A DNA stretch of 53,551 bases, counting the filler, from Sluysia triapertura (Eukaryota): the NCBI GenBank assembly GCA_046118255.1. It is 4 parts of 4 records of this genome, joined end to end, with 100 filler letters (N's around TTAATTAATTAA, not from the genome) between each part and the next. Parts side by side here need not be neighbours in the genome. Positions count along the whole stretch, not along the records: positions 11,133 to 24,258 come from JBJNIA010057989.1; 3 more parts are not named here. One strand, 5' to 3'. The notes below the pieces were generated by a model that saw only the letters and a program-made list of their open reading frames with translations, was not told the origin of the DNA and searched no databases. Shown piece by piece: positions 11,133 to 24,258 of this stretch (its first letter is position 1; each line of letters opens with the position of its first letter). Position numbers and translations under genes: made by a program.

Positions 11133-11145
11133 AAAAAAAGCAAGC
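11133..11145 (+). repeat. Left inverted terminal repeat AAAAAAAGCAAGC
   Basis: Exact reverse complement of 24246-24258. Confidence 0.9.
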
Positions 11146-11196
11146 CCAAGGGAAATTTTCTTTTTTCCCCATTTACTAGTAAATTGCTAGTGGGCT
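11143..11196 (-). terminator. Terminal hairpin cluster, possible terminator or origin structure
   Basis: AGCCCA (11143-11148) pairs with TGGGCT (11191-11196); internal GGGAAA/TTTCCC stem and perfect palindrome ATTTACTAGTAAAT (11171-11184); a T-run follows on the minus strand. Confidence 0.35.
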
Positions 11197-11204
11197 ATAT
11201 TTAA

Positions 11205-11492
11205 TTAAAAGTATGTTAGGTGTTCTTGTTGTTTAGTCCCTTCTTGTTCAGCTTTTTTAATCACATTATTAAACATGTCTACTAGTTCACAATACATAGC
11301 ACAACAACCATATCTTAAGTGATTATATTTTAGAGCTAGTATTTCATCTTTCATTTCTTTTAGTTCTTGTAGTGCTAGCTTTGTCCCTTTTAGAAAATAG
11401 CCACCATAATATCTATTAGGGAGTGTGTAATAATGAGCTAGATTTTTCATTATTGTAGTAGCACTTCTTTTTTTGTTGTTGTTATTTGTCAT
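11205..11492 (-). CDS. Phage small hypothetical protein (95 aa), probably early
   Basis: ORF with AAAAGGA RBS and its own consensus promoter at 11537-11564. Confidence 0.8.
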   Translation of the reverse strand: MTNNNNKKRSATTIMKNLAHYYTLPNRYYGGYFLKGTKLALQELKEMKDEILALKYNHLRYGCCAMYCELVDMFNNVIKKAEQEGTKQQEHLTYF

Positions 11493-11536
11493 ATGTATTT
11501 GTCCTTTTCCTGAAACTATTTTTAGTTTCTAATTAT

Positions 11537-11564
11537 ATTATATATTATTTACTAGTAATGTCAA
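11537..11564 (-). promoter_or_regulatory. Sigma70-type promoter TTGACA-N16-TATAAT
   Basis: Perfect -35 and -10 hexamers on the minus strand upstream of ORF 11492. Confidence 0.75.
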
Positions 11565-11572
11565 TAGTTTTT

Positions 11573-11794
11573 TTAATTATTTTTTGTATTGATGATTTCA
11601 TATATTTCAAAATCTAAATCATCTATAGCTTCATTTACTTTTTGGAAAGCATCAATTAATTTATCTAGTTGTGATTTGGAAAATCTCCTACTAGCTTCAT
11701 CTTTGATATTATCATATAGATTAATTATTCTAGTATTTTGATTTAATAAATCATCTAGAAATTGTTTTTGTCTTTCATTTAAATTAAAGTTCAT
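11573..11794 (-). CDS. Phage small acidic helical hypothetical protein (73 aa)
   Basis: ORF with AGAAGGA RBS, starting 1 nt after the upstream gene's TAA. Confidence 0.8.
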   Translation of the reverse strand: MNFNLNERQKQFLDDLLNQNTRIINLYDNIKDEASRRFSKSQLDKLIDAFQKVNEAIDDLDFEIYEIINTKNN

Positions 11795-11795
11795 A

Positions 11796-12065
11796 TTATT
11801 TTCCTTCTCTTTCTATTCATTGTCCAGTTTTTCAATCTTTAACACCATCTAGACAATCTTTTATATTTTTTTCTAAACATCATAAAATAAATCTTGTTTT
11901 TCTTACTTCTATTCTAACTTTTGATAATTCAATCTTACATAATAAAAGTTCATCAGTAGTTAGATATTTTTTAATCATTGTTAAACTTTTTTGTTTTTTT
12001 AATAACTTCATATTGTAGTTATAATATTTTCTATATTCTTTTTCTTTTTCTAGTTTGTAGTTCAT
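11796..12065 (-). CDS. Phage basic hypothetical protein (89 aa, code 4)
   Basis: MNYKLEKEKEY...FILWCLEKNIKDCLDGVKDWKTGQWIEREGK; 3 in-frame TGA; GAAAGG RBS; TAA ends 1 nt before the next ATG. Confidence 0.8.
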
Positions 12066-12078
12066 TTTATTTACCTTT

Positions 12079-12387
12079 CTATTGTTGTCACACATATAAT
12101 ATTTTTTCATTATTCATAATATCAAATTGAGATTTTAACCCAAAAATATATGAATAATTAACATCTTCACATGATAAATAAATCTCTTGTAAATATTCCC
12201 TTAATTTTGCTCCATCAGGGCATATTTCTAATAGATTTCATATAATAATTTTACTATTTAGAAAGTTTCATATTCTCCCTACTTGATTGTCTTTTGTCAT
12301 TTCATATTGATTAGTTAACAATGCTAATTCATATTCTTTTTGAATAAATAAATTAATCATGTGTTCTACTCTTTGCTTTGTGTTCAT
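12079..12387 (-). CDS. Phage hypothetical protein (102 aa, code 4), absent from the ORF track
   Basis: AAGGAG RBS; MNTKQRVEHMINLFIQKEYELALL...ILYVWQQ; 3 in-frame TGA; TAG stop overlaps the next gene's RBS. Confidence 0.8.
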
Positions 12388-12439
12388 TTGGAACTCCTTG
12401 TAATTTTTCTAGAAAGCCTTTTTATAACTTTCTAGTTTA

Positions 12440-12467
12440 ATTTTACTAGATAAAAAATAAATGTCAA
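12440..12467 (-). promoter_or_regulatory. Sigma70-type promoter TTGACA-N16-TAAAAT for the leftward operon
   Basis: Near-consensus hexamers about 50 nt upstream of ATG 12387. Confidence 0.65.
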
Positions 12468-12509
12468 GAAAAATAATAAAAATTTTTCTAGTTTCGTATA
12501 TAATGCGAG

Positions 12510-12665
12510 TAAGGGCTTATTGTTGCTAGAAAATAAAACACACGGAGCCGTCTAATGAAAAAAGAAGCGAAAATTACCAAAAATAACAATTTTTTTGGCT
12601 CCTTTAAAGCACTAATTTTTATTAATTTAATAATTAACTAGCAAGAGAAAAAACAACCCCCTCCC
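12510..12665 (+). ncRNA. Candidate structured RNA (possible packaging RNA, pRNA)
   Basis: TATAAT at 12499-12504; nested stems AGGG/CCCT, TTGCTAG (12523-12529)/CTAGCAA (12638-12644), GGAGCC (12544-12549)/GGCTCC (12597-12602); largest non-coding gap in the phage. Confidence 0.35.
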
Positions 12666-12675
12666 ATATTAAATA

Positions 12676-12703
12676 TTGCTTTTAGAATAAGAAATGCTAT
12701 AAT
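12676..12703 (+). promoter_or_regulatory. Extended -10 promoter (TTGCTT-N16, TGCTATAAT), probably leaderless
   Basis: TGnTATAAT ends 6 nt before ATG 12710; no SD sequence. Confidence 0.65.
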
Positions 12704-12709
12704 GTAATT

Positions 12710-14803
12710 ATGATTCACAAAATATATCTTTCTACATTTACTCCCAACTGAATTAAAAGTGATAATAAACCATCATTTTTAACGGCATTAGCCTATAAAC
12801 AAACTGATAAAGTTAAAAATCGGGAAGTGTGAATGAATAACTTTTTTACTAACCCTCCGATAGAAGTTCCAGTAGTATTTATAGATAATTTACATCGTAG
12901 TTTTACAATTGAACAAAAGCCAAATGTCGCTCTTTTGAATTATACATATTGTAAGATGATAGATGAAAATAATTTTACTACTTATGGTTTTATTACTAAC
13001 TATGTTTACACAAATAAAAATCAATGTAAATATATTGTAGAAATTGATATTTGAACAACATATTACCCCCTATTAACATTCCAAAATAATAAAGAAGTAT
13101 TTGTGATTAATAAAATGTATAATCGTTATAATAAACAAAAGAATGGCTATTTTCGTAGTTCCTTATTAGATTTAAGCCACCCCGTTCAAAATATAGATAC
13201 GAAACATCGTGATTTTACAAATCTAATTCCTAATGGAGGGTATCAATTTGTTTATCGTGAAAAAACCCTTTTTCCTGATAGTTGAATACCAAAAGAATCG
13301 CCATTTAAACTACGAAATTATGCCTTTGACCAAATGAACCCAACTTTGGCTTATTCATCAGCCCCATATTTCCCGATAGGTTTTATTACTTTTGCCCGCA
13401 CTGATTTTGAAGCAAAAAACCCGAACTATAAAAACTATATTAATGCCGGGTGTTTACCAGTCCCATATATGATATACCATGGGTTAGCAGAAAGTCAAGA
13501 TGATTGAATTGATTTGACGTGATTAGGGAATGGAGTAGCAGTTTCAAAAGTTTCCTTTTCTTTATTTCCATTATTACCAAAATCATCATTAGTTTCCTTA
13601 ACAATTCCGTATAACTGAAGTGGAAGTTGAACCCAAACAGTTACATCGCAAGCACGTTTTTTTCCACCTTATTCCAACTTAAATACGAAAACTGAGAAAG
13701 TTGGTTATTTACCAACCCCCGCAACTAATTTTAACTATATGGTTGATTTTAATGATTATTATGGTATTTTTGGTAAACAAAATGGGAGTTTCTTATTATA
13801 TAGTGATTATCATTTAATTCGTGATTTACAAGGTGAGGACACTAAAAATAAATTATTTAACCCAAATATTCCTTATAATGTATGAGATGAACCTTTATTG
13901 TGAAAACAACCCCACATGTTACTAAAATTTTGTTATGGGGAAGTTTCCCAAAATTTCGGGTTACAATTTTTCGGCAGTCGTTTTTATAGTACAGCGATGA
14001 ATAATGAATATACAACTGGTTCTGCTATTAGATTTAAAGTCTTTAATATCTTAACGATTTATGCGGTAGAACACCATATTATTCCCGACACTGATTATTA
14101 TTTAAATTCATCACAAGTGGGAATAAATTTTGCGCCAAATGTAGTAAATATTACATCTCCTAAACTTAAAATTGTTAACAATGCGACATTACCACAAGTT
14201 AACGACAAATACCTCCAAATGTGAAGTCAAACCTCAAACTCAATGAATACCGGCTTAAATATTGCGCATGAAAAAATCGGGCAGGGAATATTAGGTGGTT
14301 TTGGAGCAGGAGCACTTGCCGGAGGGCCGATAGGAGGAATTGTGGGGGGAATTATGGGAGCGGCTAATGCCGGAATTAATGCCTTATTTGCTCATCAACA
14401 ATACGACGCTAAAATTGCTGATGCGCAACAATCACCATCAACTTTGAAAAATACGCAAAGTGAGTTTAGTATTAATATGAACTTAGCGAACTTTCAAATT
14501 ATACAAACACAATTACCAGATTTTCAAGCTAGACAATTATTTAACATTGTGAACACGGAAGGGTATAATGCGAAAAGATATGAAAAAATAGATGATAAAT
14601 GATTTTATAATCGTTGTTGATTTGATTATTTTAAAGTAGCGAATATTATGAATGCTTTAAATAGAGAAGTTCTATTACCTTTCTTTGTTTGAGAATATTT
14701 TGACGATTTATTTAAAAATGGGGTGCGAACATTTCACGAATCAATCTTTTATGTCGGTAAAATTGATTGAAATAATTGTGAAACTGATTATGCTGAATGA
14801 TAA
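12710..14803 (+). CDS. Tail protein, phi29 gp9-like (697 aa, code 4)
   Basis: One frame across four track ORFs with about 16 in-frame TGA. N-terminal YGFITNYVY...VEIDIWTTY and C-terminal LFKNGVRTFH match gp9-family motifs; internal Gly-rich hydrophobic segment. Confidence 0.85.
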
Positions 14804-16052
14804 TATCATTGATAATTTCAATTGAGAATATTGTGAATCTCAAAGTGGACGAAATAATGCTGGTTATTATTCTATTGCTAATGCTCACAAATTAGGTAAA
14901 GAAATTAATGCTTGATTATATTTTATTATGTCACCCCGTAACATCGGGAAATCAACAGCTATTTATAATGAAGTGCTAATCAAAGCCTATAATGAGAATA
15001 AAAAGGTATTATTTTTAAGAAGGACATTAGCCGAAGCCAAATCTCTTGCGCAATCGTTAGAGGAGTTTTACGCATTATATTTTGAAACAAAAACCTATAT
15101 TGTGAAAGAGGACAACCGCTATTTACTTTATACTTATCAAAATGAAAATGAGTTTTCCAAAAGCTATACATCTTATAAGATTCGGGAAAATCTTATCAAT
15201 GATGGAAAACTAGTTGGTTATTTTACCTATTTACAAGGCGCTACTAGTAATAAATCAATGAACGTGACGCCGGTTGATATTATTTTCTTTGATGAAATTG
15301 TTGCGGAACACAAGCGAATTATTACTAATGAATTACAATTATTAATTTCCTTAATTTCTACCTATCAAAGATATCGTAATGCGGTAATTTATTTTGTGTC
15401 TAATAATCTAGAAGGAAATTATAAATATCTTGATTTCTTTTTACCAAACCAAACTCTCCCGGAAAAAGGAAAATGTAAATCTTATCATTCTAAAAGAATA
15501 CTAGAATATGATGGAATGAATGTTAATGCTGATGTCTCAATTGTCATTGATATTCCCAAAATGTCCAAAGAATTACTAGAGTTAACCCCTAACTCTACTA
15601 AAGCTCTTGCCTCGTTAAACGAGCATGCTTACGAATATCTCCTAGGTGGCGCGAACCCTGATAACTTAGAACTAGTTGTTTACCCGCAAAACTTAAAAGA
15701 AATTACCCATCTCTTTAATTTATATATTGCTAACATTGATATCTTAAGTGGTGGCGGAGTTGGTTTTTATCGGGCTTTAAAAGATAATCGTCATATTTTT
15801 TATGTTTCCAAAATCTACAAACCATTATTATCATCTACTAAAAATTACGCATTAGATAATATTGCCAAAATTAATTATGGGTTAGATATGGTGATTAGTG
15901 ATAGTTGTTTTAATAATATTTTAAAATGATGTAAATATAAAAGTTTATGGTATAATAATAATACTTATAAAAATGTAATAATGAATATCATTAATTTAGT
16001 TGATAGTCAAGAGAGCGAGTTAGAATTAAAATATGAAAAAGCCAAAGATTAG
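14790..16052 (+). CDS. DNA packaging ATPase, phi29 gp16-like (420 aa, code 4)
   Basis: Walker A SPRNIGKST, FLRR motif, Walker B IIFFDE; overlaps both neighbouring genes. Confidence 0.9.
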
Positions 16053-16632
16053 TGCGGCAACCCTTTTAAAAAAATATGGAAAATTACCAGCCGAAGTTAG
16101 AAAATATTTAAATGTGAGTGCCCAACAAGAACAAATACACGAAATTAGAAAAATTAAACAACGCATTTATTATCGTAATTTAAAAATTAAAAATGTTAAA
16201 CTCCGTTATCTAGCAGCGGGGTTACCACTTTTAGATTTTGAAAAGTATTATAAATTACAAATGGTTTCTACTAAGGGAATTAAAAATATGTCCGTATTAC
16301 GCAACATTGAAAAAACATTAAATCGTAGTTTAAAGGTTAATTGAGAAAAAGAAATTAAAAAAGCTGTGCGCCAACAATCTCGCACTCAACGTGCTCGTTT
16401 AAAACAAACTGAACGTTACCAACTTTTAGATTTATTAAAATCAGAATTACAAAAAGGCGATAGTGCGAATAAGAATGTTGTTAATATGTTAAAAAGGGAA
16501 ATATATGCTCGTGTCCGTAATGGAGAATATGAAAACCCCCTTACAAATGTTCTAGAAAATTATTTGGCGGAAGGGTTAGATGCGGAAGCATTAAATTATT
16601 TCTTGCGTTTTGTTTTAACTGTGGTAAAATAA
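16033..16632 (+). CDS. Probable terminal protein (199 aa, code 4)
   Basis: Two track ORFs join through one TGA. Strongly basic N-terminal half and helical C-terminal half, upstream of SSB and pPolB. The function is inferred from position and composition only. Confidence 0.55.
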
Positions 16633-16688
16633 TAATAAGCGAAAATCTCCGCGCATGATAATAGATAGATAGAAAGTGAAATTAACAA

Positions 16689-17000
16689 ATGATTAATTTA
16701 GATGAATTTAAAAAATATAGTCCAAAAATATATGATGTAGAAGGGAAATTTATTGTTAAAGATATTTCTGCTAAAGGAATAAACTTTAAAGCATATTCGC
16801 TAGTATTGTCAAACGATACAAAAAACGTGTGAATAAAATTAAGCAAATATGATGTTAATAAATTTTTACCAACTGCCAAATCAGGCGATAAAATTAGAGT
16901 GAAAGGTGAATATACTGTTAGTTCCAAATTTAGTGAAAAACATAATACTAGTTTTGAAACTCATAAAATCATCATTCACGATGCCGAAATTGTGAAGTAA
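16689..17000 (+). CDS. Probable OB-fold single-stranded DNA-binding protein (103 aa, code 4)
   Basis: MINLDEFKKY...AKSGDKIRVKGEYTV resembles the SSB KKGxxVxVxG strand; AGAAAG RBS; 1 in-frame TGA; absent from the ORF track. Confidence 0.65.
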
Positions 17001-17006
17001 TTAATG

Positions 17007-17030
17007 AATAGGGGTTAGATAACCTCTATT
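17007..17030 (+). terminator. Intergenic hairpin between SSB and polymerase genes
   Basis: AATAGGGGTT-AGAT-AACCTCTATT, a 10-bp stem with one G-U pair and a weak U-tail. Confidence 0.5.
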
Positions 17031-17053
17031 AATAATTATTTTAAAGGAATAAA

Positions 17054-18760
17054 ATGAATACAAGTTATCGTCCGACTTATGTGGCTGATTTAGAAACCCT
17101 AAATGAAACTGATACTTTAATTAATGGTAAACCTGATAGTTGATTGTGAGTAATTATTAATTTGAATAATGAAAAGGAAATCTATAAAGGTGTTAAACTA
17201 GCAGAAATGTTAGAACAATTTGATAAGTTAGGAAGTTGTAATGTTTATTTTCATAATGGGGGAAAATTTGATTTTTGATATCTAGTAAGTGAAATGATTA
17301 ATAATAAATTTTACCCGATGTATTTTGAGAATAATCAAGCATTTCTAAAACCTTACCAGTTCCGTTTATTAAATATTAAAAATAATATTTTTAGCCTACA
17401 AGTTTGTTTTCCAAATGGCGGCATTATTAATTTTAAAGATAGTCTAAAACTAATTCCCGCCTCAATAAAATCACTAGACATTAATACTGAGGAAAAAAAA
17501 GTGGAACTAGATTTTGATAAATCACGCCTTTACATTAAAACCATTGCTGATTTAAATGAATTAGAAATTGCTAGATGTGTAAATGATTGTCGCATTATTA
17601 TACCATATTTAAAAAAATTTCAACAAACTTTTACCACAAAAACGACGATTGCGAGTACCTCATTTGCTAATTGTCGCAACAATTTTAAAGAATTCTTTAA
17701 TAATGAATTAATGAATAGTTTAAGTGAGGAGGAATGAGATTATGTCAAACGCAGTTATGAAGGAGGGTATGTTTATTTAAACCCTAAATACCAAAATATT
17801 CCGTTAAATGACATTTACACGTATGATGTCAATAGTGCGTATCCATTTCAGATGACGAAGGAATTGCCATATGGGAAAATGCTTACGCGCAAACCAAAAG
17901 AACCACATACAATTTTAATGGAAGTATATATTGTCAAAGCCAAATTAAAAACTGGTTTTCACCCTTACATCTACACTGATAAAAAAGAAAATGGAACAAA
18001 AATTTATCATGATAAAATTAAAAATAAAGTGCTGATTATGTGAGATTTTGAATTAGATTTAATCAAAGAACTTTATGAAATAGAGTATTATATCACAAAT
18101 CGTAAATATTTCCTAACAAAAAAATATTTAAGTGATTATATTACTAATTTATATCACAAACGTCTTGACGCCAAAAATAATCATGATAATATATTAGCCC
18201 TAATTTACAAATTGATTCTTAATTCTCTATACGGAAAATTTGGACAAAATTATAATACAAAAGAAAGGAAACTTGAACTAGTTAGAGGAAAAGAACCAAA
18301 AAAATATGAGCGTTACTTTAAAGTTGGGGAAAATGTGTGATATGTTTTCAAGGAATATGAAATGAAAACTGCCCAAATCTACCCGGTTCAGGTAGCTAGT
18401 TATATTACTGCCAAACAACGAGTTTATATTCATTCATTCATCATTAAATACCGCGATATCTTTGTGTATACGGACACTGATAGTTTGAAGTTAACCCAAC
18501 CCATTCCTGAGGAAAACGCTATCTCTCATAAACTAGGTGATTTGAAATATGAAAAACTAGATAAAAATTTTTATATCATTCGTCCAAAAACTTATATGGG
18601 AGATGGTAAAGCAACGATTACCGGACTTAATAAAAATGTTCAAATTACCATGAAAGATTTAGAAAATGTTGTAATAAAAATTGCGAATGGTAAGACAATT
18701 AACAAAATAATTAATGGTTGTCCATTCATAAAAAATGTTGATTATCTACTAGAAAAATAG
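17054..18760 (+). CDS. Protein-primed family B DNA polymerase (568 aa, code 4)
   Basis: ExoI VADLET, ExoII YFHNGGKFD, SYEGG, motif A YDVNSAYP, motif B KLILNSLYGKFG, ASYITA, motif C YTDTDS, RPKTY; AAAGGA RBS; 6 in-frame TGA. Confidence 0.97.
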
Positions 18761-18766
18761 TATAAT
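18738..18766 (+). promoter_or_regulatory. Promoter TTGATT-N17-TATAAT, probably leaderless
   Basis: The -10 ends 7 nt before ATG 18774; no SD sequence. Confidence 0.6.
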
Positions 18767-18773
18767 ATATAAT

Positions 18774-19775
18774 ATGAGTAACTGAATACCTTTAAATAAT
18801 ACAACGTTAATGAATAACGTTATCAAATCGTTAACTGATTTAAATGTTAACAACCCTTTTTACATGCGTCAAATCTTAAAATCAATGAATAGATTTAAGA
18901 TTGTTTGTAAGAAAAAAGAATGAGAAAAAGAATGGGAAGCATCTTGAAATGCGGCGGCTTTTTATTTATGAATTACCGGCATTTCGGCAATTAGAAAAAT
19001 TGATGTTGGCGGCAATATTTATTTTAAATCTTATAATTTATCACCAACCGCTTATAATACTAATTTTGAAGTAATTGATGGAATTGCTTGTTTAAATCAA
19101 TGGTTTTCCTCAACTAGACAAAATGAAAGTCAAATCACTTATAAATTAAAAAACATTCCTAATGATGAGGAATGAGTTGTATTAAAAAATAATATTTTAA
19201 ATGTTCCAACTTGATTTTTTATTAAAGATTATTTGAATCTCCAAAATGAAACATTGAAAGCCTTTGCCTCAAATCTAAAAATGTCGTTAACAAAAATGTT
19301 ATTTTTCACTGATACTGGTGATGAAGGTAACTTGTTACGCAAAAGAATTGAAAAGGTTATTAAAGATGATGAATATAGAGGTATTTATGTTATTGATGGA
19401 AATGATGCTGACAAGATGAATATTTTTTCTAAAGAAAATATTGTTAAAATTGATGTTCCCTCAGAAATTAACCGCTATTTAGATGTTATTGATAATTTAG
19501 ATGAGAAAATCGGTAGCGCCATCGGGTATGAAACTGATATCAATTCTAAAAAAGAACGTAAAATTACTGATGAAAGTAAACAGGACAAAGTAGAAATTTT
19601 ACTAGCAAAATATAATTTCCGCATGTATCTAGAAATTGCTGTTAAAGAAATGAATAAAAAATGAGGTGGCGATTATTTTGAACTTGTTGATGTGGGCGAA
19701 TTACTAGCGCCAAAAGAAGCCGAGGAAACTAGTGAGGAGGTGAAAGAAAATGAAAATACAGACAAAACAATTTAA
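18774..19775 (+). CDS. Head-tail connector (portal), phi29 gp10-like (333 aa, code 4)
   Basis: IGYETDINSKKERKITDE matches the gp10 KKERxxxDE motif; 7 in-frame TGA. Confidence 0.88.
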
Positions 19776-22152
19776 GGACTTATACCCTGATTTTAAACAT
19801 TGAACAAATCTTATTCTTAACCCATTAAAAAAAGTGGTACCACCAAATCAAGAATGAATGAATGATAAAATGTGTTATTATTCACAAGAACTAATTTATA
19901 ATAATATGATGTTACGTTATGCTAGTAGATACGGTGTCTTTCTAGATAATGATATGAACCGCAAGATTATTTATATTATGGAACTCCATTTACCAGAGTT
20001 GTATATTAACACTTTAGTCTTTAAAAAAGGTAATCTAGATGATGATTTTGATTTAGATAATATCGGTGAAAATGAAAAATCAAAAACTAATTTAGTTAAT
20101 GATAATACAATCAACACGGCAAATGCCGAAATGTCAACATCTAACCCATCTAAAGATTGAACTGATAAAGATATTGCGAACACAAAAGAATTTCAAGCCA
20201 ACAAAGGAAAACAAGATATAATTTCTATTCGTAGTAAAACTGATAGATTAAAAAATTATGAAAGTTTGCGTGATGATAATTTCACAACTTTAATGGAAAA
20301 ATTTTTAAATCGTTTTGCGTCTCTATTTGTTCCTTATAGTAATTATACTGATATTCCTGATAATGATAATCACCATTATTTAAGTGGTAATGATATTAAA
20401 GTTGATGAATATTTACATTATGATTTTAATAGTTCTACAAATAAAGCTACAATCGGGAGCAAGTTATATAGTAACATTCATGTTAAAGATTTACCAAATG
20501 GGGTAAATACTTTATGTTATGAACTAGAATATGGTAATCATGTATTTTGTGGGCGAGCTAATGGAATGGTAATTTGTGATGAATTACAACCAAAATTAAT
20601 TTATAATATTCGTCAGATTATTTTTGATAGTAATTCCATTACTATCTATTATAACATTCTTAATGGAACGACAAATGCGATTAACCCAGTTCAAGATTTT
20701 TCAATGGTGATGAAATATATTTTGAAAAAAGGGGAAAATGTCCGTAAAATTACTTATCAACAATTTATTAAAGGGGCTTTACCAACTCAAATACTAGATA
20801 AAGATTTTAATAATGCTTGTTTACGAAATATTGCTGATGGAGTTAATGATAATGATGCGGTTTCAATGCGTCAATTAAAAAATATTAGACCGATAGGTGA
20901 TTCACCTTATTTATATTTAACTGATAAAACTACGCTAGCGACAATACTAAGTCAAAATGATAACTTAACAATTGCCCATAATTATATTTATATGTATGAT
21001 AATACGGCTTATAAACGTAATTTTAAAATCATTATTAATAATATTAATATTAATAATACTGATGGAAAAAATTGAAAAATAAGAATATGAGCCACAAGTC
21101 AAGAATTAATTATCGGTGATAAAATGCCGCATTTCCATCATTGAGAAATTTATTTAGAAAATGCTTATACCGGCAATACTCCTTTTGCCACTCTAGTAAA
21201 AGATAACCCAAAAATGTTTATTTTCCCTTTTCTTAACAAAAAAAGTTATGGAAGGGCTTATTATGATAGTGGTTGAATTGATGAAAATATGACACTTGCC
21301 GACATTCAATATAATTTAAATCGGGGCGTGAGATTGTATTGAAATCGCACATCACCGCCGCTTGAAATTGCGTTAATTATTGTTCCTAATAATAAAAAAA
21401 TGCCGGTTGAAATTTATGCTACTGCGATGTTTAATACTTTAAATCAAATAAAAATTTATAACCCAGCTTTTACCTCTGAGACTATGAATCGTACATTTGG
21501 CGAACTGATGAGTAATGGTAATACGAAAATGCCAACAGTTACCCCCATGATAAATAACTTAGAAATGAGTAATGGTGATGATTATAGTGATAAAACCCTT
21601 TCAAGTGTAATGACATGAGGGAAATGAAAAAAACACCAAGAAAGCGGCGTGAATTTGGTATTCCCAACGAAACAACGCTGAAATACCCAAGGGCCTTGAT
21701 ATCGCTTAACAATTGCGACTGATTCTGTCCTTTTTGAGTTTACCCCGAGATTTATGGACTACTTTACGAGTTTATCAAAAACTTTACCAATAACATATAC
21801 TTTTCCAAATGGTAAAACATATCAACCCCGATATAGTGTACTTTTTCGTGTAACAACGAAAGTTGCGCCAGGAATGATTGCTCGTGATATTGAATGTAAG
21901 GTACTAATAAGTGGTGGGGCTCCTTCTTTTAAAATTGAAAACATTGAGAAAATATCTCCTTACTCAACTTATTATGATAAAGATGGCTGAGCAAAAGTTA
22001 TGATTTGTGATTTTAGTAATAATAACGTCCCTGATGTTTTAAAAGTTAGTTTAAAAAATGGTTATGGAACGCAGTTTTCTTATGACGCCAACCTTTTCTG
22101 TTTAGAAACCGAATTAGTCCAAGAACCATATGCTACTACTAAGGAACAATAA
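19750..22152 (+). CDS. Lower-collar-like N-terminus fused to a fibre/receptor-binding region (800 aa, code 4)
   Basis: GAGGAGGTGA RBS; one frame across four track ORFs with about 13 TGA. Follows the connector as gp11 does; contains the adhesin-neck motif LRNIADGVNDNDAVSMRQL. Confidence 0.7.
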
Positions 22153-22325
22153 TGATAAAATTTTATGTGGAATTAATTGTTTTAACAATTGTTTTTCTAA
22201 CATTATTTTTAACCTCTATTATTACCAAACAAGAATGAGCGGAAAACTTTTTATATGGTTATATGGGTGGGTACTTTAGTTTTGTAGGAATTAATAAAAT
22301 AAAGAAATGGAGTAATAAAAAATAA
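22152..22325 (+). CDS. Small membrane protein, holin-like (57 aa, code 4)
   Basis: MIKFYVELIVLTIVFLTLFLTSIITKQEWAENFLYGYMGGYFSFVGINKIKKWSNKK; TAATG coupling; one or two TM segments and a basic tail. Confidence 0.65.
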
Positions 22326-22345
22326 TTTTGTTTTTTATTTAAATA

Positions 22346-22354
22346 TGATATAAT
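22346..22354 (+). promoter_or_regulatory. Extended -10 promoter TGATATAAT, probably leaderless
   Basis: Ends 6 nt before ATG 22361; no SD sequence. Confidence 0.6.
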
Positions 22355-22360
22355 ATAAAT

Positions 22361-22657
22361 ATGGAAAATGAAAAAGAATTAAAAAAAGTTGAAAATTCCA
22401 AAACAACTAAAAATGAGGAACCAAAAGAGGAAGCAAAAGTTAATCTAGAGGAATTAATCAAATCTAAGTTTGATGAACATTTTTCTCGTGAAAAAGAAAA
22501 ATTAACCGAAGCTGATAAAATTTGAAAGGAAAATATGACAAAATCACTAACTAATTTAATCAATAAAATTGATGGAATTAAAGTTCCAGAATCAAAGGAA
22601 AAACGCGAATTTAGTGATATTATTAAAGGTGTATTCCGCAAAGGAGGTGATAAATAA
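22361..22657 (+). CDS. Probable capsid scaffolding protein (98 aa, code 4)
   Basis: Charged helical E/K-rich ORF coupled (TAATG) to the capsid gene; 1 in-frame TGA. Confidence 0.7.
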
Positions 22658-23931
22658 TGAATAAACACGAAAAACTAGCGAAAGAGATGCTTACTGAAGT
22701 TGGTTTGGAACCTAATGAAAAAGGGTTACGAGAACTAGCAAATGCCGCTGAGGAAGCAGGTGGGAGACGTTTAAAACCAGACGCAAGTACAACAAATAGC
22801 TATGTTAATTTAATGTCTAAATTATCATATCAAATTACCGAAAATGCGTTTATTTTCAAAAATGTCTTTAATGAAATTGCTGAACACTTATCTTATAGTG
22901 CTGGGTACCGAGGAGTTCTTAACTTAATCGGTTTACTAAAAGCGGGTGATTTTGCTAAAATGCCGTTTACGCCAAATGGGACTGCTGATAATTCCAAAAC
23001 TGGTGAGGGTAGTTTAGGCAAACGTCCGTCTTTTGAGATAAAATCTCTAGGAAATATAAAATTCTACGTGGAAAACATTGTTAATGAATATCAATGAAAT
23101 CAAGCCTTTTTAACTCTCCAATCTCTAGGAAACTTTTTAACAAACTTTATTGAAAAAATTAACACTGATTTAGAATTGTTTGAATTTGAATTGATTAGAG
23201 GTATGATTAAGTTGTGTGGTTACAATGTTGTTTTAAATAGTATTGATGGAAGTTATGAAATTGATATTAATTTAACTGCTGCGAAAGCAAATAAAAATTG
23301 TAATATTCTTTTAGATGAAAAAACAATCTTGAGTGATGGAAAATTAATCGCGCAGGTGTTCTCTAACATTCTATCAAACTCAGTAGTAATGTCTACAGCC
23401 TTTACTGGTTTAAATGCTATTACTGATTCTACATATAAAATTCCTGGAAACCTTGATGTTGAGGAAAGTATTATTGTAATGTTACCTGACTATTGAAATA
23501 AAATTAAAGCCGAATCTTGAGCTTATGCGTTTAATGAAGTTAATTTACACTTTCCAACGGAAAATGTTATTTTATACCCATTTGACTTAAAACAACCTGT
23601 TAAACAAGATATTAAATTTGCTAATGGTTTAACGATGAATGATACAATTGATAAACAAAGTTGATACAAAGGTGATGTAATTGCTTATATTATTCCTAAA
23701 AAATTAATTAAGATAATTAGACAGTTTAACTTTGGTTTTGTCTCTATGTGAAACAATGGTGTTCAATGAACTACAATGACAAGTTCATTAGATTTAATGA
23801 TAAATGCTGCGTTACCATTCTTTAGAATTATAAAATACACAGGAACTACTCCGGCAACTGATAAACCTATTACAAGTATTCCAATGTTGATTAAAACTTT
23901 GAAAGATGCTATAAGTGAAGCAAATAAATAA
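22657..23931 (+). CDS. Major capsid protein, phi29 gp8-like (424 aa, code 4)
   Basis: AAAGGAGGTGA RBS; WNQAFLTLQSLGNFLTNFIEKINTDLELFEFELIR resembles the gp8 AFxSxxxFxxFxxxI...EY helix; 6 in-frame TGA. Confidence 0.82.
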
Positions 23932-23950
23932 AAAATTTTTAAAAAAACTA

Positions 23951-23979
23951 TTGACATTTTGATTTTTTTGATATATGAT
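23951..23979 (+). promoter_or_regulatory. Sigma70-type promoter TTGACA-N17-TATGAT
   Basis: Shares 20 nt with the left-end promoter and points toward the right terminus. Confidence 0.7.
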
Positions 23980-24053
23980 ATAGATAACTAGTTAAAGAAC
24001 TAGACAAAACTTTAGGAAGCTAGTTATATTTCTAGATAAAAAATACAACAATT

Positions 24054-24200
24054 ATGAGAAAACTAATAATTACATTAACCATCTTACTTTTATATAAATG
24101 TGAGGAATCTATTAAAGGTAACGACAAGATATCTCAAGATATCAGAGGCTTAATTAAAGATTTGATAAAATACTTAGAAGCTTATAAAAGAGTTAGATAG
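24054..24200 (+). CDS. Small terminal ORF (48 aa) with hydrophobic N-terminus
   Basis: MRKLIITLTILLLYKCEESIKGNDKISQDIRGLIKDLIKYLEAYKRVR, downstream of a promoter; no clear SD. Confidence 0.5.
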   Translation: MRKLIITLTILLLYKCEESIKGNDKISQDIRGLIKDLIKYLEAYKRVR

Positions 24201-24245
24201 AATCTCATAGTAGCAAGTTTATAAAGGAATAAAAATTCCTGATTA

Positions 24246-24258
24246 GCTTGCTTTTTTT
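24246..24258 (-). repeat. Right inverted terminal repeat
   Basis: GCTTGCTTTTTTT is the reverse complement of 11133-11145. Confidence 0.9.

What the first reader, a model, noticed from the sequence alone, without database searches (positions are those of the whole stretch)
11796..23931. TGA is a sense codon (Trp, code 4), pointing to a Mollicutes host
Seen: about 60 in-frame TGA codons lie inside otherwise continuous genes, some between catalytic PolB motifs. I found only about 4 in-frame TGG. True stops are TAA/TAG and abut or overlap the next start (TAATG at 22150-22154 and 22655-22659). Established: Mycoplasma and Spiroplasma relatives read TGA as Trp, while Gracilibacteria and Absconditabacteria read it as Gly. 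Inference: Trp is favoured because the proteins would otherwise be nearly Trp-free, GGN codons are plentiful, and TGA falls at aromatic or hydrophobic positions such as EIDI-W-TTY.
Basis: partly seen in the sequence, partly recalled or inferred. Interest (0 to 1): 0.8.

Follow-up and report, generated by a model that had tools for sequence, protein, structure and literature searches.

The report
Small phage reading TGA as tryptophan
This piece is the complete 13.1-kb linear genome of a very divergent phi29-like phage whose genes all read the stop codon TGA as tryptophan, so its host must be a bacterium with that altered code, most likely a mycoplasma-type bacterium, though the host is not shown.

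Summary
Read with TGA as sense, the piece resolves into 13 ORFs (4016 codons, 91% coding) with 60 in-frame TGA and 3 TGG. Every stop is TAA or TAG, and both TAATG junctions are real. TGA means Trp, not Gly. Of 28 TGA codons alignable to homologue families in five genes, 5 sit on columns whose commonest residue is Trp (odds ratio 16.8, p=4.5e-5). None sits on a Gly column, where 11.8 would be expected if TGA were Gly (P=2e-7). If TGA were Gly the proteome would hold 0.08% Trp, against a minimum of 0.71% in 80 related phages. The piece is a complete protein-primed genome: it has terminal inverted repeats, a PolB, a gp16-type ATPase, and probable tail knob, connector and capsid genes. It has no tRNA, and TGA density is the same in replication and structural genes, so the host itself must decode UGA. 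The Mollicutes host is the likeliest reading (GC 28.5%; codon profile like Mycoplasma phage P1) but is not demonstrated. Code 4 also occurs in gut Eggerthellaceae and other lineages, and I found no host link. The phage has no close relative in any collection searched. It is a new, deep-branching member of a known kind.

The parts
11133..11159 (.). Left terminal inverted repeat. The first 13 nt match the other end perfectly and begin with a run of seven A; a degenerate extension reaches about 27 nt.
   Evidence: the repeat finder pair I15; end-to-end alignment
24232..24258 (.). Right terminal inverted repeat
11205..11492 (-). Small left-end ORF, 95 codons, no TGA, stop TAA. Lies behind a 12/12 consensus sigma-70-type promoter.
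   Evidence: no Pfam or PHROG hit
11537..11564 (-). Outward-facing consensus promoter (TTGACA-16-TATAAT). It lies within a 29-nt element repeated in inverted orientation near the right end.
   Evidence: repeat I4, 93% complementary
11573..11794 (-). Small ORF, 73 codons, no TGA
   Evidence: no PHROG hit
11796..12110 (-). Left-arm ORF, about 104 codons (start uncertain), 3 in-frame TGA, stop TAA
12079..12387 (-). Left-arm ORF, 102 codons, 3 in-frame TGA, stop TAG, SD-like site upstream
12440..12467 (-). Promoter-like site (11/12) facing the left-arm ORFs
12710..14803 (+). ORF A, 697 codons, 16 TGA, 0 TGG. Probable tail-knob protein (phi29 gp9-like). TATAAT lies 7 nt before the ATG.
   Evidence: hhalign to the relatives' gp9 cluster, probability 92-96%; cluster identity from Pfam PF16838/PF20934; weak tblastn to the gp9_C gene of L005
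14790..16052 (+). ORF B, about 420 codons (start uncertain), 3 TGA, 1 TGG. DNA encapsidation ATPase (phi29 gp16 type).
   Evidence: Pfam Terminase_6N 27.7 bits, above its cutoff; Podovirus_Gp16 23.4 bits, just below its cutoff; phrog_2150 E=7e-20; family HMM E=6.7e-43; the family profile hits PDB 7jqq, 5hd9 and 7jq6
16033..16632 (+). ORF C, 199 codons, 1 TGA. Function unknown; candidate terminal protein by position only.
   Evidence: no family hit
16689..17000 (+). ORF c2, 103 codons, 1 TGA, unknown function, followed by a terminator-like hairpin
17054..18760 (+). ORF D, 568 codons, 6 TGA, 0 TGG. Protein-primed family-B DNA polymerase.
   Evidence: phrog_1907; one continuous domain against a 120-sequence PF03175 family HMM, E=1.4e-54; motifs visible; the family profile hits PDB 1xhx
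18774..19775 (+). ORF E, 333 codons, 7 TGA, 2 TGG. Probable connector/portal (phi29 gp10-like).
   Evidence: hhalign to the relatives' PF05352 cluster, probability 61-71%
19750..22152 (+). ORF F, 800 codons, 13 TGA. Candidate tail fibre or appendage. Strong SD site before the ATG at 19750.
   Evidence: weak YadA_stalk hit; weak similarity of its N-terminus to the phage P1 putative tail fibre, E=0.008
22152..22325 (+). Small ORF, 57 codons, 1 TGA. Its start overlaps the stop of F (TAATG).
22361..22657 (+). ORF G, 98 codons, 1 TGA, unknown function (in the scaffold position)
22657..23931 (+). ORF H, 424 codons, 6 TGA. Probable major capsid protein (phi29 type). AGGAGG site upstream; its start overlaps the stop of G (TAATG).
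   Evidence: hhalign to the relatives' PF25622 cluster, probability 52-60%; RBS
23951..23979 (+). Outward-facing promoter (11/12) at the right end, the inverted copy of the left-end element
24054..24200 (+). Small right-end ORF, 48 codons, no TGA

Best explanation
The piece is the complete linear genome (13,126 bp, GC 28.5%) of a lytic-type, protein-primed, phi29-like podovirus. All of its genes are written in genetic code 4. UGA is read as tryptophan by the host's own translation apparatus, presumably a tRNA-Trp that reads UGA in a cell without release factor 2. Only UAA and UAG terminate. Shown: TGA is sense; it is not Gly; it sits preferentially on Trp columns; the genome is complete and carries no tRNA; replication genes are as recoded as structural genes. 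Inferred: the host natively uses code 4 (about 0.9). Further inferred: that host is a Mollicute of the Mycoplasmatales/Entomoplasmatales type (about 0.6). The near-total replacement of TGG by TGA is what AT mutational pressure produces once the two codons are synonymous.
For: Sense codon: ORF sum rises from 1809 to 4057 aa and the longest ORF from 333 to 806 aa, and the TAG control gives nothing. The polymerase with X at each TGA aligns as one domain across all six TGAs, E=1.4e-54. The ATPase does likewise, E=6.7e-43. Trp, not Gly: 5 of 28 alignable TGA columns fall on the 28 W-commonest columns out of 1828 (odds ratio 16.8, p=4.5e-5). That is 3.6 times the rate of any other residue class, and the five columns lie in four genes. 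None of the 28 falls on the 118 G-commonest columns, although the window's own GGN codons sit there in 35 of 83 cases (expected 11.8; P=2e-7). Gly ranks 19-20 of 20 in a Codetta-style likelihood. For the polymerase alone W ranks first. Proteome: W would be 0.08% if TGA were Gly, against a minimum of 0.71% and a GC-regressed expectation of 1.05 +/- 0.23% in 80 relatives. All 120 family polymerases have at least 8 W; the window's has no TGG. The A-ending share for TGA/TGG is 0.95, like Lys, Glu, Gln and Leu pairs at 0.81-0.91. Positive control: Mycoplasma phage P1 has 39 TGA and 2 TGG in 3579 codons at GC 26.8%. Host decoding: terminal inverted repeats at both exact ends; no tRNA and no Rfam family; TGA per 100 codons is 1.67 in late genes, 1.06 in the polymerase and 1.85 in the left arm. 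Mollicute: GC 28.5% against a Mycoplasmatales mean of 27.1%; no cell-wall hydrolase detected, whereas the relatives carry GH25, M23 or NlpC/P60.
Against: Trp is not separated from Met, Tyr, Phe and Leu by the smoothed likelihood over the remote structural alignments. The Trp-specific signal rests on five columns, and three of them come from alignments of only 52-96% hhalign probability. No host link of any kind was found. Codon usage differs from Mycoplasma phage P1: CpG observed/expected is 0.99 against 0.36, and GCG, CGN, GGG, ACG and CCG are several-fold enriched. The polymerase is only 24% identical to P1's. The missing lysin is weak evidence, because the same profile search also missed the capsid and connector. 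The three ORFs without TGA are the small terminal ORFs behind the strongest promoters, a pattern that a code-switch model would also predict. However, it covers only 216 codons, about 3 TGA would be expected, and P(0) is about 0.04 (my estimate from the densities).
Confidence: 0.85

Rival explanations
1. Same phage and same code 4, but the host is a non-Mollicute code-4 bacterium, for example the recently described gut Eggerthellaceae genera Equivita and Gorillivita, or a code-4 lineage not yet recognised.
For: Code 4 is reported in four phyla, including Eggerthellaceae MAGs from mammalian stool with GC 31-40%. The polymerase's nearest family is the gut Guelinviridae-like group, which includes Eggerthella phage LE1-1. 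CpG is not depleted and NCG/CGN codon use is high, unlike Mycoplasma phage P1 and AT-rich relatives. The stop usage of 10 TAA to 3 TAG equals the 76:24 reported for those MAGs, but n=13.
Against: GC 28.5% is below the reported 31-40% range and matches the Mycoplasmatales mean of 27.1%. Polymerase similarity is flat across the GC content of all relatives (rho=0.15, p=0.17; 25-29% identity to all), so there is no specific affinity to the Eggerthella phage. No cell-wall hydrolase was found, although a Gram-positive host would normally require one. Mollicutes are by far the most species-rich code-4 group.
Confidence: 0.22
2. The host uses the standard code and the phage imposes UGA read-through itself, as proposed for code-4 gut phages such as the Agate and Jade clades.
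For: Such phages exist, and only 35% of them had a detectable suppressor tRNA. The only TGA-free ORFs are three small terminal ORFs behind consensus promoters, which could be standard-code-compatible early genes.
Against: The genome is complete at 13.1 kb, with no tRNA by ARAGORN, no Rfam match, and no synthetase or release-factor gene. The polymerase needed for replication carries six TGAs, and TGA density is uniform across gene classes. In the described code-switching phages, by contrast, the replication genes are encoded in the standard code, or variably recoded depending on the clade. Eleven of 13 ORFs are recoded, the pattern that the same paper attributes to phages of recoded hosts.
Confidence: 0.04
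3. TGA encodes glycine (code 25) and the host is an Absconditabacterium or Gracilibacterium.
For: GC is compatible. GGN Gly is low at 4.5% and would rise to 6.0%. Code-25 phages are known.
Against: None of 28 TGA columns lies on a Gly-commonest column, where 11.8 would be expected (P=2e-7). Gly ranks 19-20 of 20. Trp would be 0.08% of the proteome and absent from a polymerase whose 120 relatives all have at least 8.
Confidence: 0.01
4. The TGAs are true stops: a decayed element or an assembly artefact.
For: None beyond the formal possibility.
Against: Sixty TGA but no TAA or TAG in frame over 4016 codons, where about 320 would be expected from the off-frame rate. Full-length, single-domain alignments cross the TGAs. 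The genome architecture is intact, with inverted terminal repeats.
Confidence: 0.005

Closest known systems
Mycoplasma phage P1 (Delislevirus P1, NC_002515), podovirus of Mycoplasmopsis pulmonis
   Same: Small linear dsDNA genome (11.66 against 13.13 kb) with inverted terminal repeats, a PF03175-type polymerase, AT-richness (26.8% against 28.5%), no annotated lysin, and genome-wide code 4 with almost the same statistics: 39 TGA and 2 TGG in 3579 codons, against 54 TGA and 3 TGG in 3580.
   Different: Not a sequence relative. The polymerases share 24% identity (60 bits), and no other gene pair is significant apart from a weak tail-fibre N-terminus hint at E=0.008. P1 has 350-bp repeats against 13-27 nt here, and a different gene order. 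CpG is depleted in P1 (0.36) but not here (0.99).
Guelinviridae-like gut phi29-type phages (e.g. Eggerthella phage LE1-1, MW679025) and other phi29-like podoviruses
   Same: Protein-primed PolB (best 129-141 bits), gp16-type ATPase, probable gp9 tail knob, gp10 connector and phi29-type capsid protein; genome of 13-18 kb.
   Different: All of the roughly 170 relatives fetched use the standard code. Identity is only 25-29% for the polymerase and 24-28% for the ATPase. The structural genes are detectable only by profile-profile comparison. The window has no recognisable SSB, lysin or pRNA.
Code-4 'alternatively coded' gut phages of standard-code hosts (Borges et al., bioRxiv 10.1101/2021.08.26.457843)
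   Same: TGA is read as Trp in an AT-rich phage genome.
   Different: Those phages are 22-200 kb or larger, often carry suppressor tRNAs, release factors or a synthetase, and concentrate recoding in late and lysis genes. Their replication genes are standard-code or variably recoded, depending on the clade. Here there is no such machinery and recoding is uniform.

Membership tests
Genetic code 4 (UGA = Trp) usage | In-frame TGA inside conserved genes, with TAA/TAG as the only stops | tested here: met
   60 TGA in 13 ORFs and no in-frame TAA or TAG; single-domain alignments cross the TGAs
Genetic code 4 (UGA = Trp) usage | TGA aligns to Trp positions of homologues | tested here: met
   5 of 28 columns on W-commonest columns, odds ratio 16.8, p=4.5e-5. 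One invariant-W column and one W/Y/F column in the polymerase. Caveat: the smoothed likelihood does not separate W from M, Y, F and L.
Genetic code 4 (UGA = Trp) usage | TGG largely replaced by TGA, and a normal Trp content only if TGA counts as Trp | tested here: met
   TGA:TGG = 60:3; W is 1.59% if Trp and 0.08% if not; the minimum among relatives is 0.71%
Genetic code 4 (UGA = Trp) usage | Decoding machinery: a tRNA-Trp that reads UGA, and loss of RF2 (prfB) | not testable with these tools
   These are host features. The phage encodes no tRNA and the host is unknown.
Genetic code 25 (UGA = Gly) | TGA aligns to Gly positions while TGG is retained for Trp | tested here: not met
   0 of 28 on Gly columns, P=2e-7; TGG is nearly absent
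phi29-like protein-primed podoviruses | PF03175-type family-B DNA polymerase | tested here: met
   E=1.4e-54 to the family HMM; phrog_1907; the family profile hits PDB 1xhx at 4e-178
phi29-like protein-primed podoviruses | gp16-type encapsidation ATPase | tested here: met
   phrog_2150 E=7e-20; family HMM E=6.7e-43; Pfam PF05894 at 23.4 bits is just under its cutoff of 25; the family hits PDB 7jqq and 5hd9
phi29-like protein-primed podoviruses | Linear genome with inverted terminal repeats that begin with a reiterated base | tested here: met
   13-nt perfect repeat at both exact ends, beginning with seven A
phi29-like protein-primed podoviruses | Terminal protein gene | tested here: inconclusive
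   No homologue found. ORFs 16033-16632 and 16689-17000 are candidates by position only.
phi29-like protein-primed podoviruses | phi29-type capsid, connector and tail-knob proteins | tested here: inconclusive
   Not detected by HMM-to-sequence search. hhalign probabilities are 92-96% for the knob, 61-71% for the connector and 52-60% for the capsid, each to the one size-matched cluster.
phi29-like protein-primed podoviruses | Packaging RNA (pRNA) | tested here: not met
   No Rfam family matched at E<=0.1 on either strand. A divergent pRNA cannot be excluded.
Delislevirus (Mycoplasma phage P1) | Genome-wide protein similarity and shared gene order | tested here: not met
   Only the polymerase matches (24% identity, 60 bits); the other pairs have E>=0.008 in an 11-protein database
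Code-switching phages of standard-code hosts | Own suppressor machinery and/or a standard-code replication module | tested here: not met
   No tRNA and no Rfam hit; the polymerase carries 6 TGA and TGA density is uniform

The most novel reading that the evidence does not exclude
This could be the first phage of a code-4 bacterium outside the Mollicutes, for example the newly described gut Eggerthellaceae Equivita or Gorillivita, or an unrecognised code-4 lineage. That would be consistent with its CpG-neutral, NCG/CGN-rich codon usage, which is unlike Mycoplasma phage P1, and with its membership of a gut phi29-like radiation. A still rarer reading is a 13-kb phage that forces UGA read-through in a standard-code host without any tRNA.
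Probability: 0.2. Interest if true: 0.6.

Novelty: new member of a known kind. Interest (0 to 1): 0.45.

Why it matters
Very few Mollicute phages are known despite long searching (PMC13375369, PMC12753311). The only sequenced protein-primed one is P1. A complete, deeply divergent second lineage would widen that picture. It has no relative above about 30% identity among roughly 15 billion proteins. It also shows in practice why standard-code gene calling fragments such genomes and hides them from virus catalogues. The recoding itself is textbook biology for code-4 hosts and would not surprise a specialist. The open and more interesting point is which code-4 host it infects.

Tried and rejected
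1. Close relatives, wanted for a direct TGA-to-TGG against TGA-to-GGN substitution count. I tried IMG/VR with two pieces, the word-based protein search, an exact-product look-up, the exhaustive 1.84-billion-representative search (21 hits, best E=1e-5), the GTDB genome scan and two metagenome scans. None is close, and none of the roughly 170 fetched relatives is recoded.

2. An alignment of the 21 ATPase hits was too diverse to serve as a locus query.

3. Single-sequence PDB searches with polymerase pieces gave no meaningful hit: nothing, and one chance match at E=0.45.

4. The ATPase TGA columns are uninformative.

5. Profiles of the relatives' gene clusters hit only the polymerase and the ATPase. 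Because capsid and connector were missed too, the absence of a lysin hit is only weak evidence for a wall-less host.

6. The smoothed Codetta-style likelihood rejects Gly but does not single out Trp. Its controls recover only 35 of 50 sense codons at this alignment depth, with errors mostly I/V/L/M swaps and Cys.

7. The idea that the polymerase is specifically akin to the Eggerthella phage, and hence that the host is a code-4 Eggerthellaceae, is rejected: similarity is flat across the GC content of all relatives.

8. Contig L131 looked recoded by ORF length but has 12 TGG against 3 TGA.

10. Not attempted: structure prediction. Only stop-free pieces may be submitted, and the relatives known only from loci cannot be used as alignment rows.

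After, in my reasoning, I wrote from memory a short stretch of the phi29 polymerase around its Exo II motif, plus generic family-B motif patterns. I also recalled the accession of phage P1 from memory, used it only as a search term, and fetched the record only after a review displayed it.

Full report
**1. What is there.** The piece 11133-24258 is 13,126 bp, has GC 28.5% and contains no N. Under the standard bacterial code it is a litter of short ORFs: the longest is 333 aa, and ORFs of 100 aa or more sum to 1809 aa. If TGA is read as sense, eight long co-directional + strand ORFs appear, plus a short leftward arm. The sum rises to 4057 aa and the longest ORF to 806 aa. Making TAG sense instead changes nothing. 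Making TAA sense only multiplies short ORFs, as expected in AT-rich DNA.

With refined starts there are 13 ORFs covering 91% of the sequence. They hold 4016 codons, 60 in-frame TGA and 3 in-frame TGG. Eleven of the 13 ORFs carry at least one TGA. Ten ORFs stop at TAA and three at TAG. A further 57-codon ORF (22152-22325) carries one more TGA. In the two off frames TAA+TAG occur at 8 per 100 codons, so about 320 would be expected in frame by chance, and none is seen. In the polymerase ORF the TGAs lie between recognisable exonuclease and polymerase motifs.

**2. What the element is.** The two exact ends of the piece are inverted repeats. The first 13 nt are identical and begin with seven A, and a degenerate extension runs to about 27 nt. 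That is the signature of a complete, linear, protein-primed genome. The gene assignments are:
- ORF 17054-18760 is a PF03175-type family-B polymerase. It hits phrog_1907. With X at each TGA it aligns as one domain, E=1.4e-54, to a profile of 120 standard-code relatives. That family's profile hits PDB 1xhx, which I know to be the phi29 polymerase, at E=4e-178.
- ORF 14790-16052 is a gp16-type encapsidation ATPase.
- Profile-profile comparison gives each large structural ORF one specific, size-matched partner among the relatives' gene clusters. ORF 12710-14803 pairs with the gp9 tail knob (92-96% probability). ORF 18774-19775 pairs with the connector (61-71%). ORF 22657-23931 pairs with the phi29-type capsid protein (52-60%).
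- ORF 19750-22152 is a candidate tail fibre on weak evidence.
- A terminal protein is not identified. The two ORFs upstream of the polymerase are candidates by position only.
- There is no tRNA, no Rfam family and hence no recognisable pRNA, and no recognisable cell-wall hydrolase.

**3. How isolated it is.**
- The largest stop-free piece, 333 aa of the ATPase, found nothing in the word-based search.
- In the exhaustive search of 1.84 billion representatives it found only 21 hits, with best E=1e-5 and 27-31% identity.
- IMG/VR, the GTDB genome collection and two metagenome scans gave no near copy.
- The polymerase is 25-29% identical to every one of about 170 phi29-like contigs fetched, and none of them is recoded.

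**4. Trp or Gly.** The tools do not accept read-through proteins, so I marked every TGA as X in local scripts and wrote no residue there. I aligned the ORFs to profiles built from standard-code relatives: HMMER for the polymerase and the ATPase, hhalign for the knob, connector and capsid. Twenty-eight TGA codons land on family columns.
- Using raw weighted column frequencies, five of the 28 land on the 28 columns (of 1828) whose commonest residue is Trp. The odds ratio is 16.8 and the one-sided p is 4.5e-5. The rate, 17.9%, is 3.6 times that of the next residue class, and the five columns lie in four different genes.
- None lands on the 118 Gly-commonest columns. The window's own GGN codons sit on those columns in 35 of 83 cases, so 11.8 would be expected if TGA were Gly (P=2e-7).
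- In the polymerase, the best alignment, one TGA falls on an invariant-Trp column and one on a W/Y/F column. W ranks first there, and Gly lies 9-14 nats below it.
- A Codetta-style likelihood with prior-smoothed emissions puts Gly 19th-20th of 20. It does not separate W from M, Y, F and L. The same procedure recovers only 35 of 50 ordinary codons at this depth and confuses I, V, L, M and Cys. So homology alone says "large hydrophobic or aromatic residue, certainly not Gly", and the raw-frequency enrichment adds the Trp specificity.

Three further lines of evidence, none relying on the TGA-column alignments, agree.
- If TGA were Gly, Trp would be 0.08% of the proteome. The minimum in 80 related genomes is 0.71%, and the GC-regressed expectation is 1.05 +/- 0.23%. 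With TGA as Trp it is 1.59%. All 120 family polymerases have at least 8 Trp, and the window's has no TGG at all.
- The A-ending share of the TGA/TGG pair (0.95) matches the two-fold A/G pairs Lys, Glu, Gln and Leu (0.81-0.91). It does not match the four-fold families (0.41-0.85).
- Mycoplasma phage P1, a known code-4 phage, has nearly the same profile: 39 TGA and 2 TGG in 3579 codons.

I put TGA=Trp at about 0.95.

**5. Who decodes it.** Code-4 phages of standard-code gut bacteria exist, and only 35% of them showed a suppressor tRNA, so a missing tRNA is not decisive by itself. Those phages, however, are 22 kb to more than 200 kb. They concentrate recoding in late and lysis genes and keep their replication genes in the standard code or only variably recoded. 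The same study reads near-complete recoding as adaptation to a recoded host. Here the genome is complete and tiny. It encodes nothing that could change decoding. TGA density is uniform: 1.67 per 100 codons in late genes, 1.06 in the polymerase and 1.85 in the left arm. The host must therefore read UGA natively (about 0.9). One loose end is that the only TGA-free ORFs are the three small terminal ones behind the strongest promoters. With 216 codons, about 3 TGA would be expected, so P(0) is about 0.04 (my estimate from the densities).

**6. Which host.**
- GC 28.5% sits on the Mycoplasmatales mean of 27.1%.
- The codon profile mirrors P1.
- No lysin is seen, while the relatives carry GH25, M23 or NlpC/P60 enzymes.
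- Mollicutes are the largest code-4 group.

It is nevertheless an inference.
- A 2026 preprint documents code 4 in gut Eggerthellaceae (GC 31-40%) and lists Pseudomonadota and Verrucomicrobiota cases as well.
- I tested whether the polymerase's best cultured match, an Eggerthella phage, signals a specific affinity. It does not. Similarity is flat across all relatives whatever their GC content.
- Codon usage differs from P1 and from equally AT-rich standard-code relatives. CpG observed/expected is 0.99, against 0.36 in P1 and 0.37-0.73 in the relatives. GCG, CGN, GGG, ACG, CCG and GTG are several-fold enriched. I cannot explain this.
- The lysin argument is weak, because the same search also missed the capsid and connector.

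My estimates are: Mollicute about 0.6, another code-4 lineage about 0.2-0.25, a standard-code host about 0.04.

**7. Comparison and novelty.** Functionally this is the P1 situation: a small protein-primed podovirus written entirely in its host's code 4. It is not a member of Delislevirus, since only the polymerase matches, at 24% identity. It stands outside the Guelinviridae-like radiation as an outgroup. TGA=Trp in a phage of a code-4 host has long been known, so the recoding is not new. What is new is a deep-branching lineage with a complete genome, in a host group for which very few phages are known. I class it as a new member of a known kind, with interest 0.45.

**8. Declarations.** I wrote no residue at any TGA, joined no frames and built no consensus. 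TGA counts are given per gene, without positions. The P1 accession was recalled as a lead and was fetched only after a review displayed it.

Noticed in passing
whole piece 11133-24258; coding ORFs: Codon usage is odd for a 28.5% GC genome. CpG observed/expected is 0.99, against 0.36 in Mycoplasma phage P1 and 0.37-0.73 in AT-rich relatives. GCG is 24% of Ala codons, CGN 72% of Arg and GGG 21% of Gly, each several-fold above P1 and the relatives. This is unexplained and may be a host signature.
   Followed up: partly
11557-11585 and 23930-23958 (third, weaker copy at 12452-12487): A 29-nt element, 93% complementary between the two genome ends, contains the -35 box of near-consensus sigma-70 promoters. 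These face outward toward each terminus and drive the small TGA-free terminal ORFs, giving a symmetric early-promoter arrangement.
   Followed up: partly
11205-11492 (-), 11573-11794 (-), 24054-24200 (+): The only ORFs without any TGA are the three small terminal ones (216 codons; about 3 TGA expected, P(0) about 0.04). None has a Pfam or PHROG hit.
   Followed up: partly
starts at 12710, 18774 and 22361: A TATAAT box lies only 6-8 nt upstream of the ATG and there is no Shine-Dalgarno site, which suggests leaderless transcripts. ORFs 19750-22152 and 22657-23931 instead have strong GGAGG-type sites.
   Followed up: no
whole piece: No Rfam hit at E<=0.1, so no recognisable phi29-type packaging RNA despite a gp16-type ATPase.
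   Followed up: no
13133-15132 and 21133-22132: Local GC rises to 0.32-0.34, against 0.23-0.29 elsewhere. GC skew switches sign near 13.6 kb, where transcription direction changes from the left arm to the rightward ORFs.
   Followed up: no
19750-22152 (N-terminal part) against L086 7903-9102: Weak similarity (25% over 182 aa, E=0.008 in an 11-protein database) between the window's large fibre candidate and the putative tail fibre of Mycoplasma phage P1. This is the only non-polymerase hint of kinship with a Mollicute phage.
   Followed up: no
L131 (OODH01005262.1): A 4.6-kb metagenome contig whose longest ORF grows from 602 to 878 codons with TGA as sense. It has 12 TGG against 3 TGA, so this is probably adjacent standard-code ORFs fused, not recoding.
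   Followed up: yes
L089 (Kiritimatiellae MAG) and L092 (Paludibacteraceae MAG): phi29-like phage-sized contigs are binned into MAGs of Gram-negative lineages, which probably reflects binning artefacts rather than hosts.
   Followed up: no
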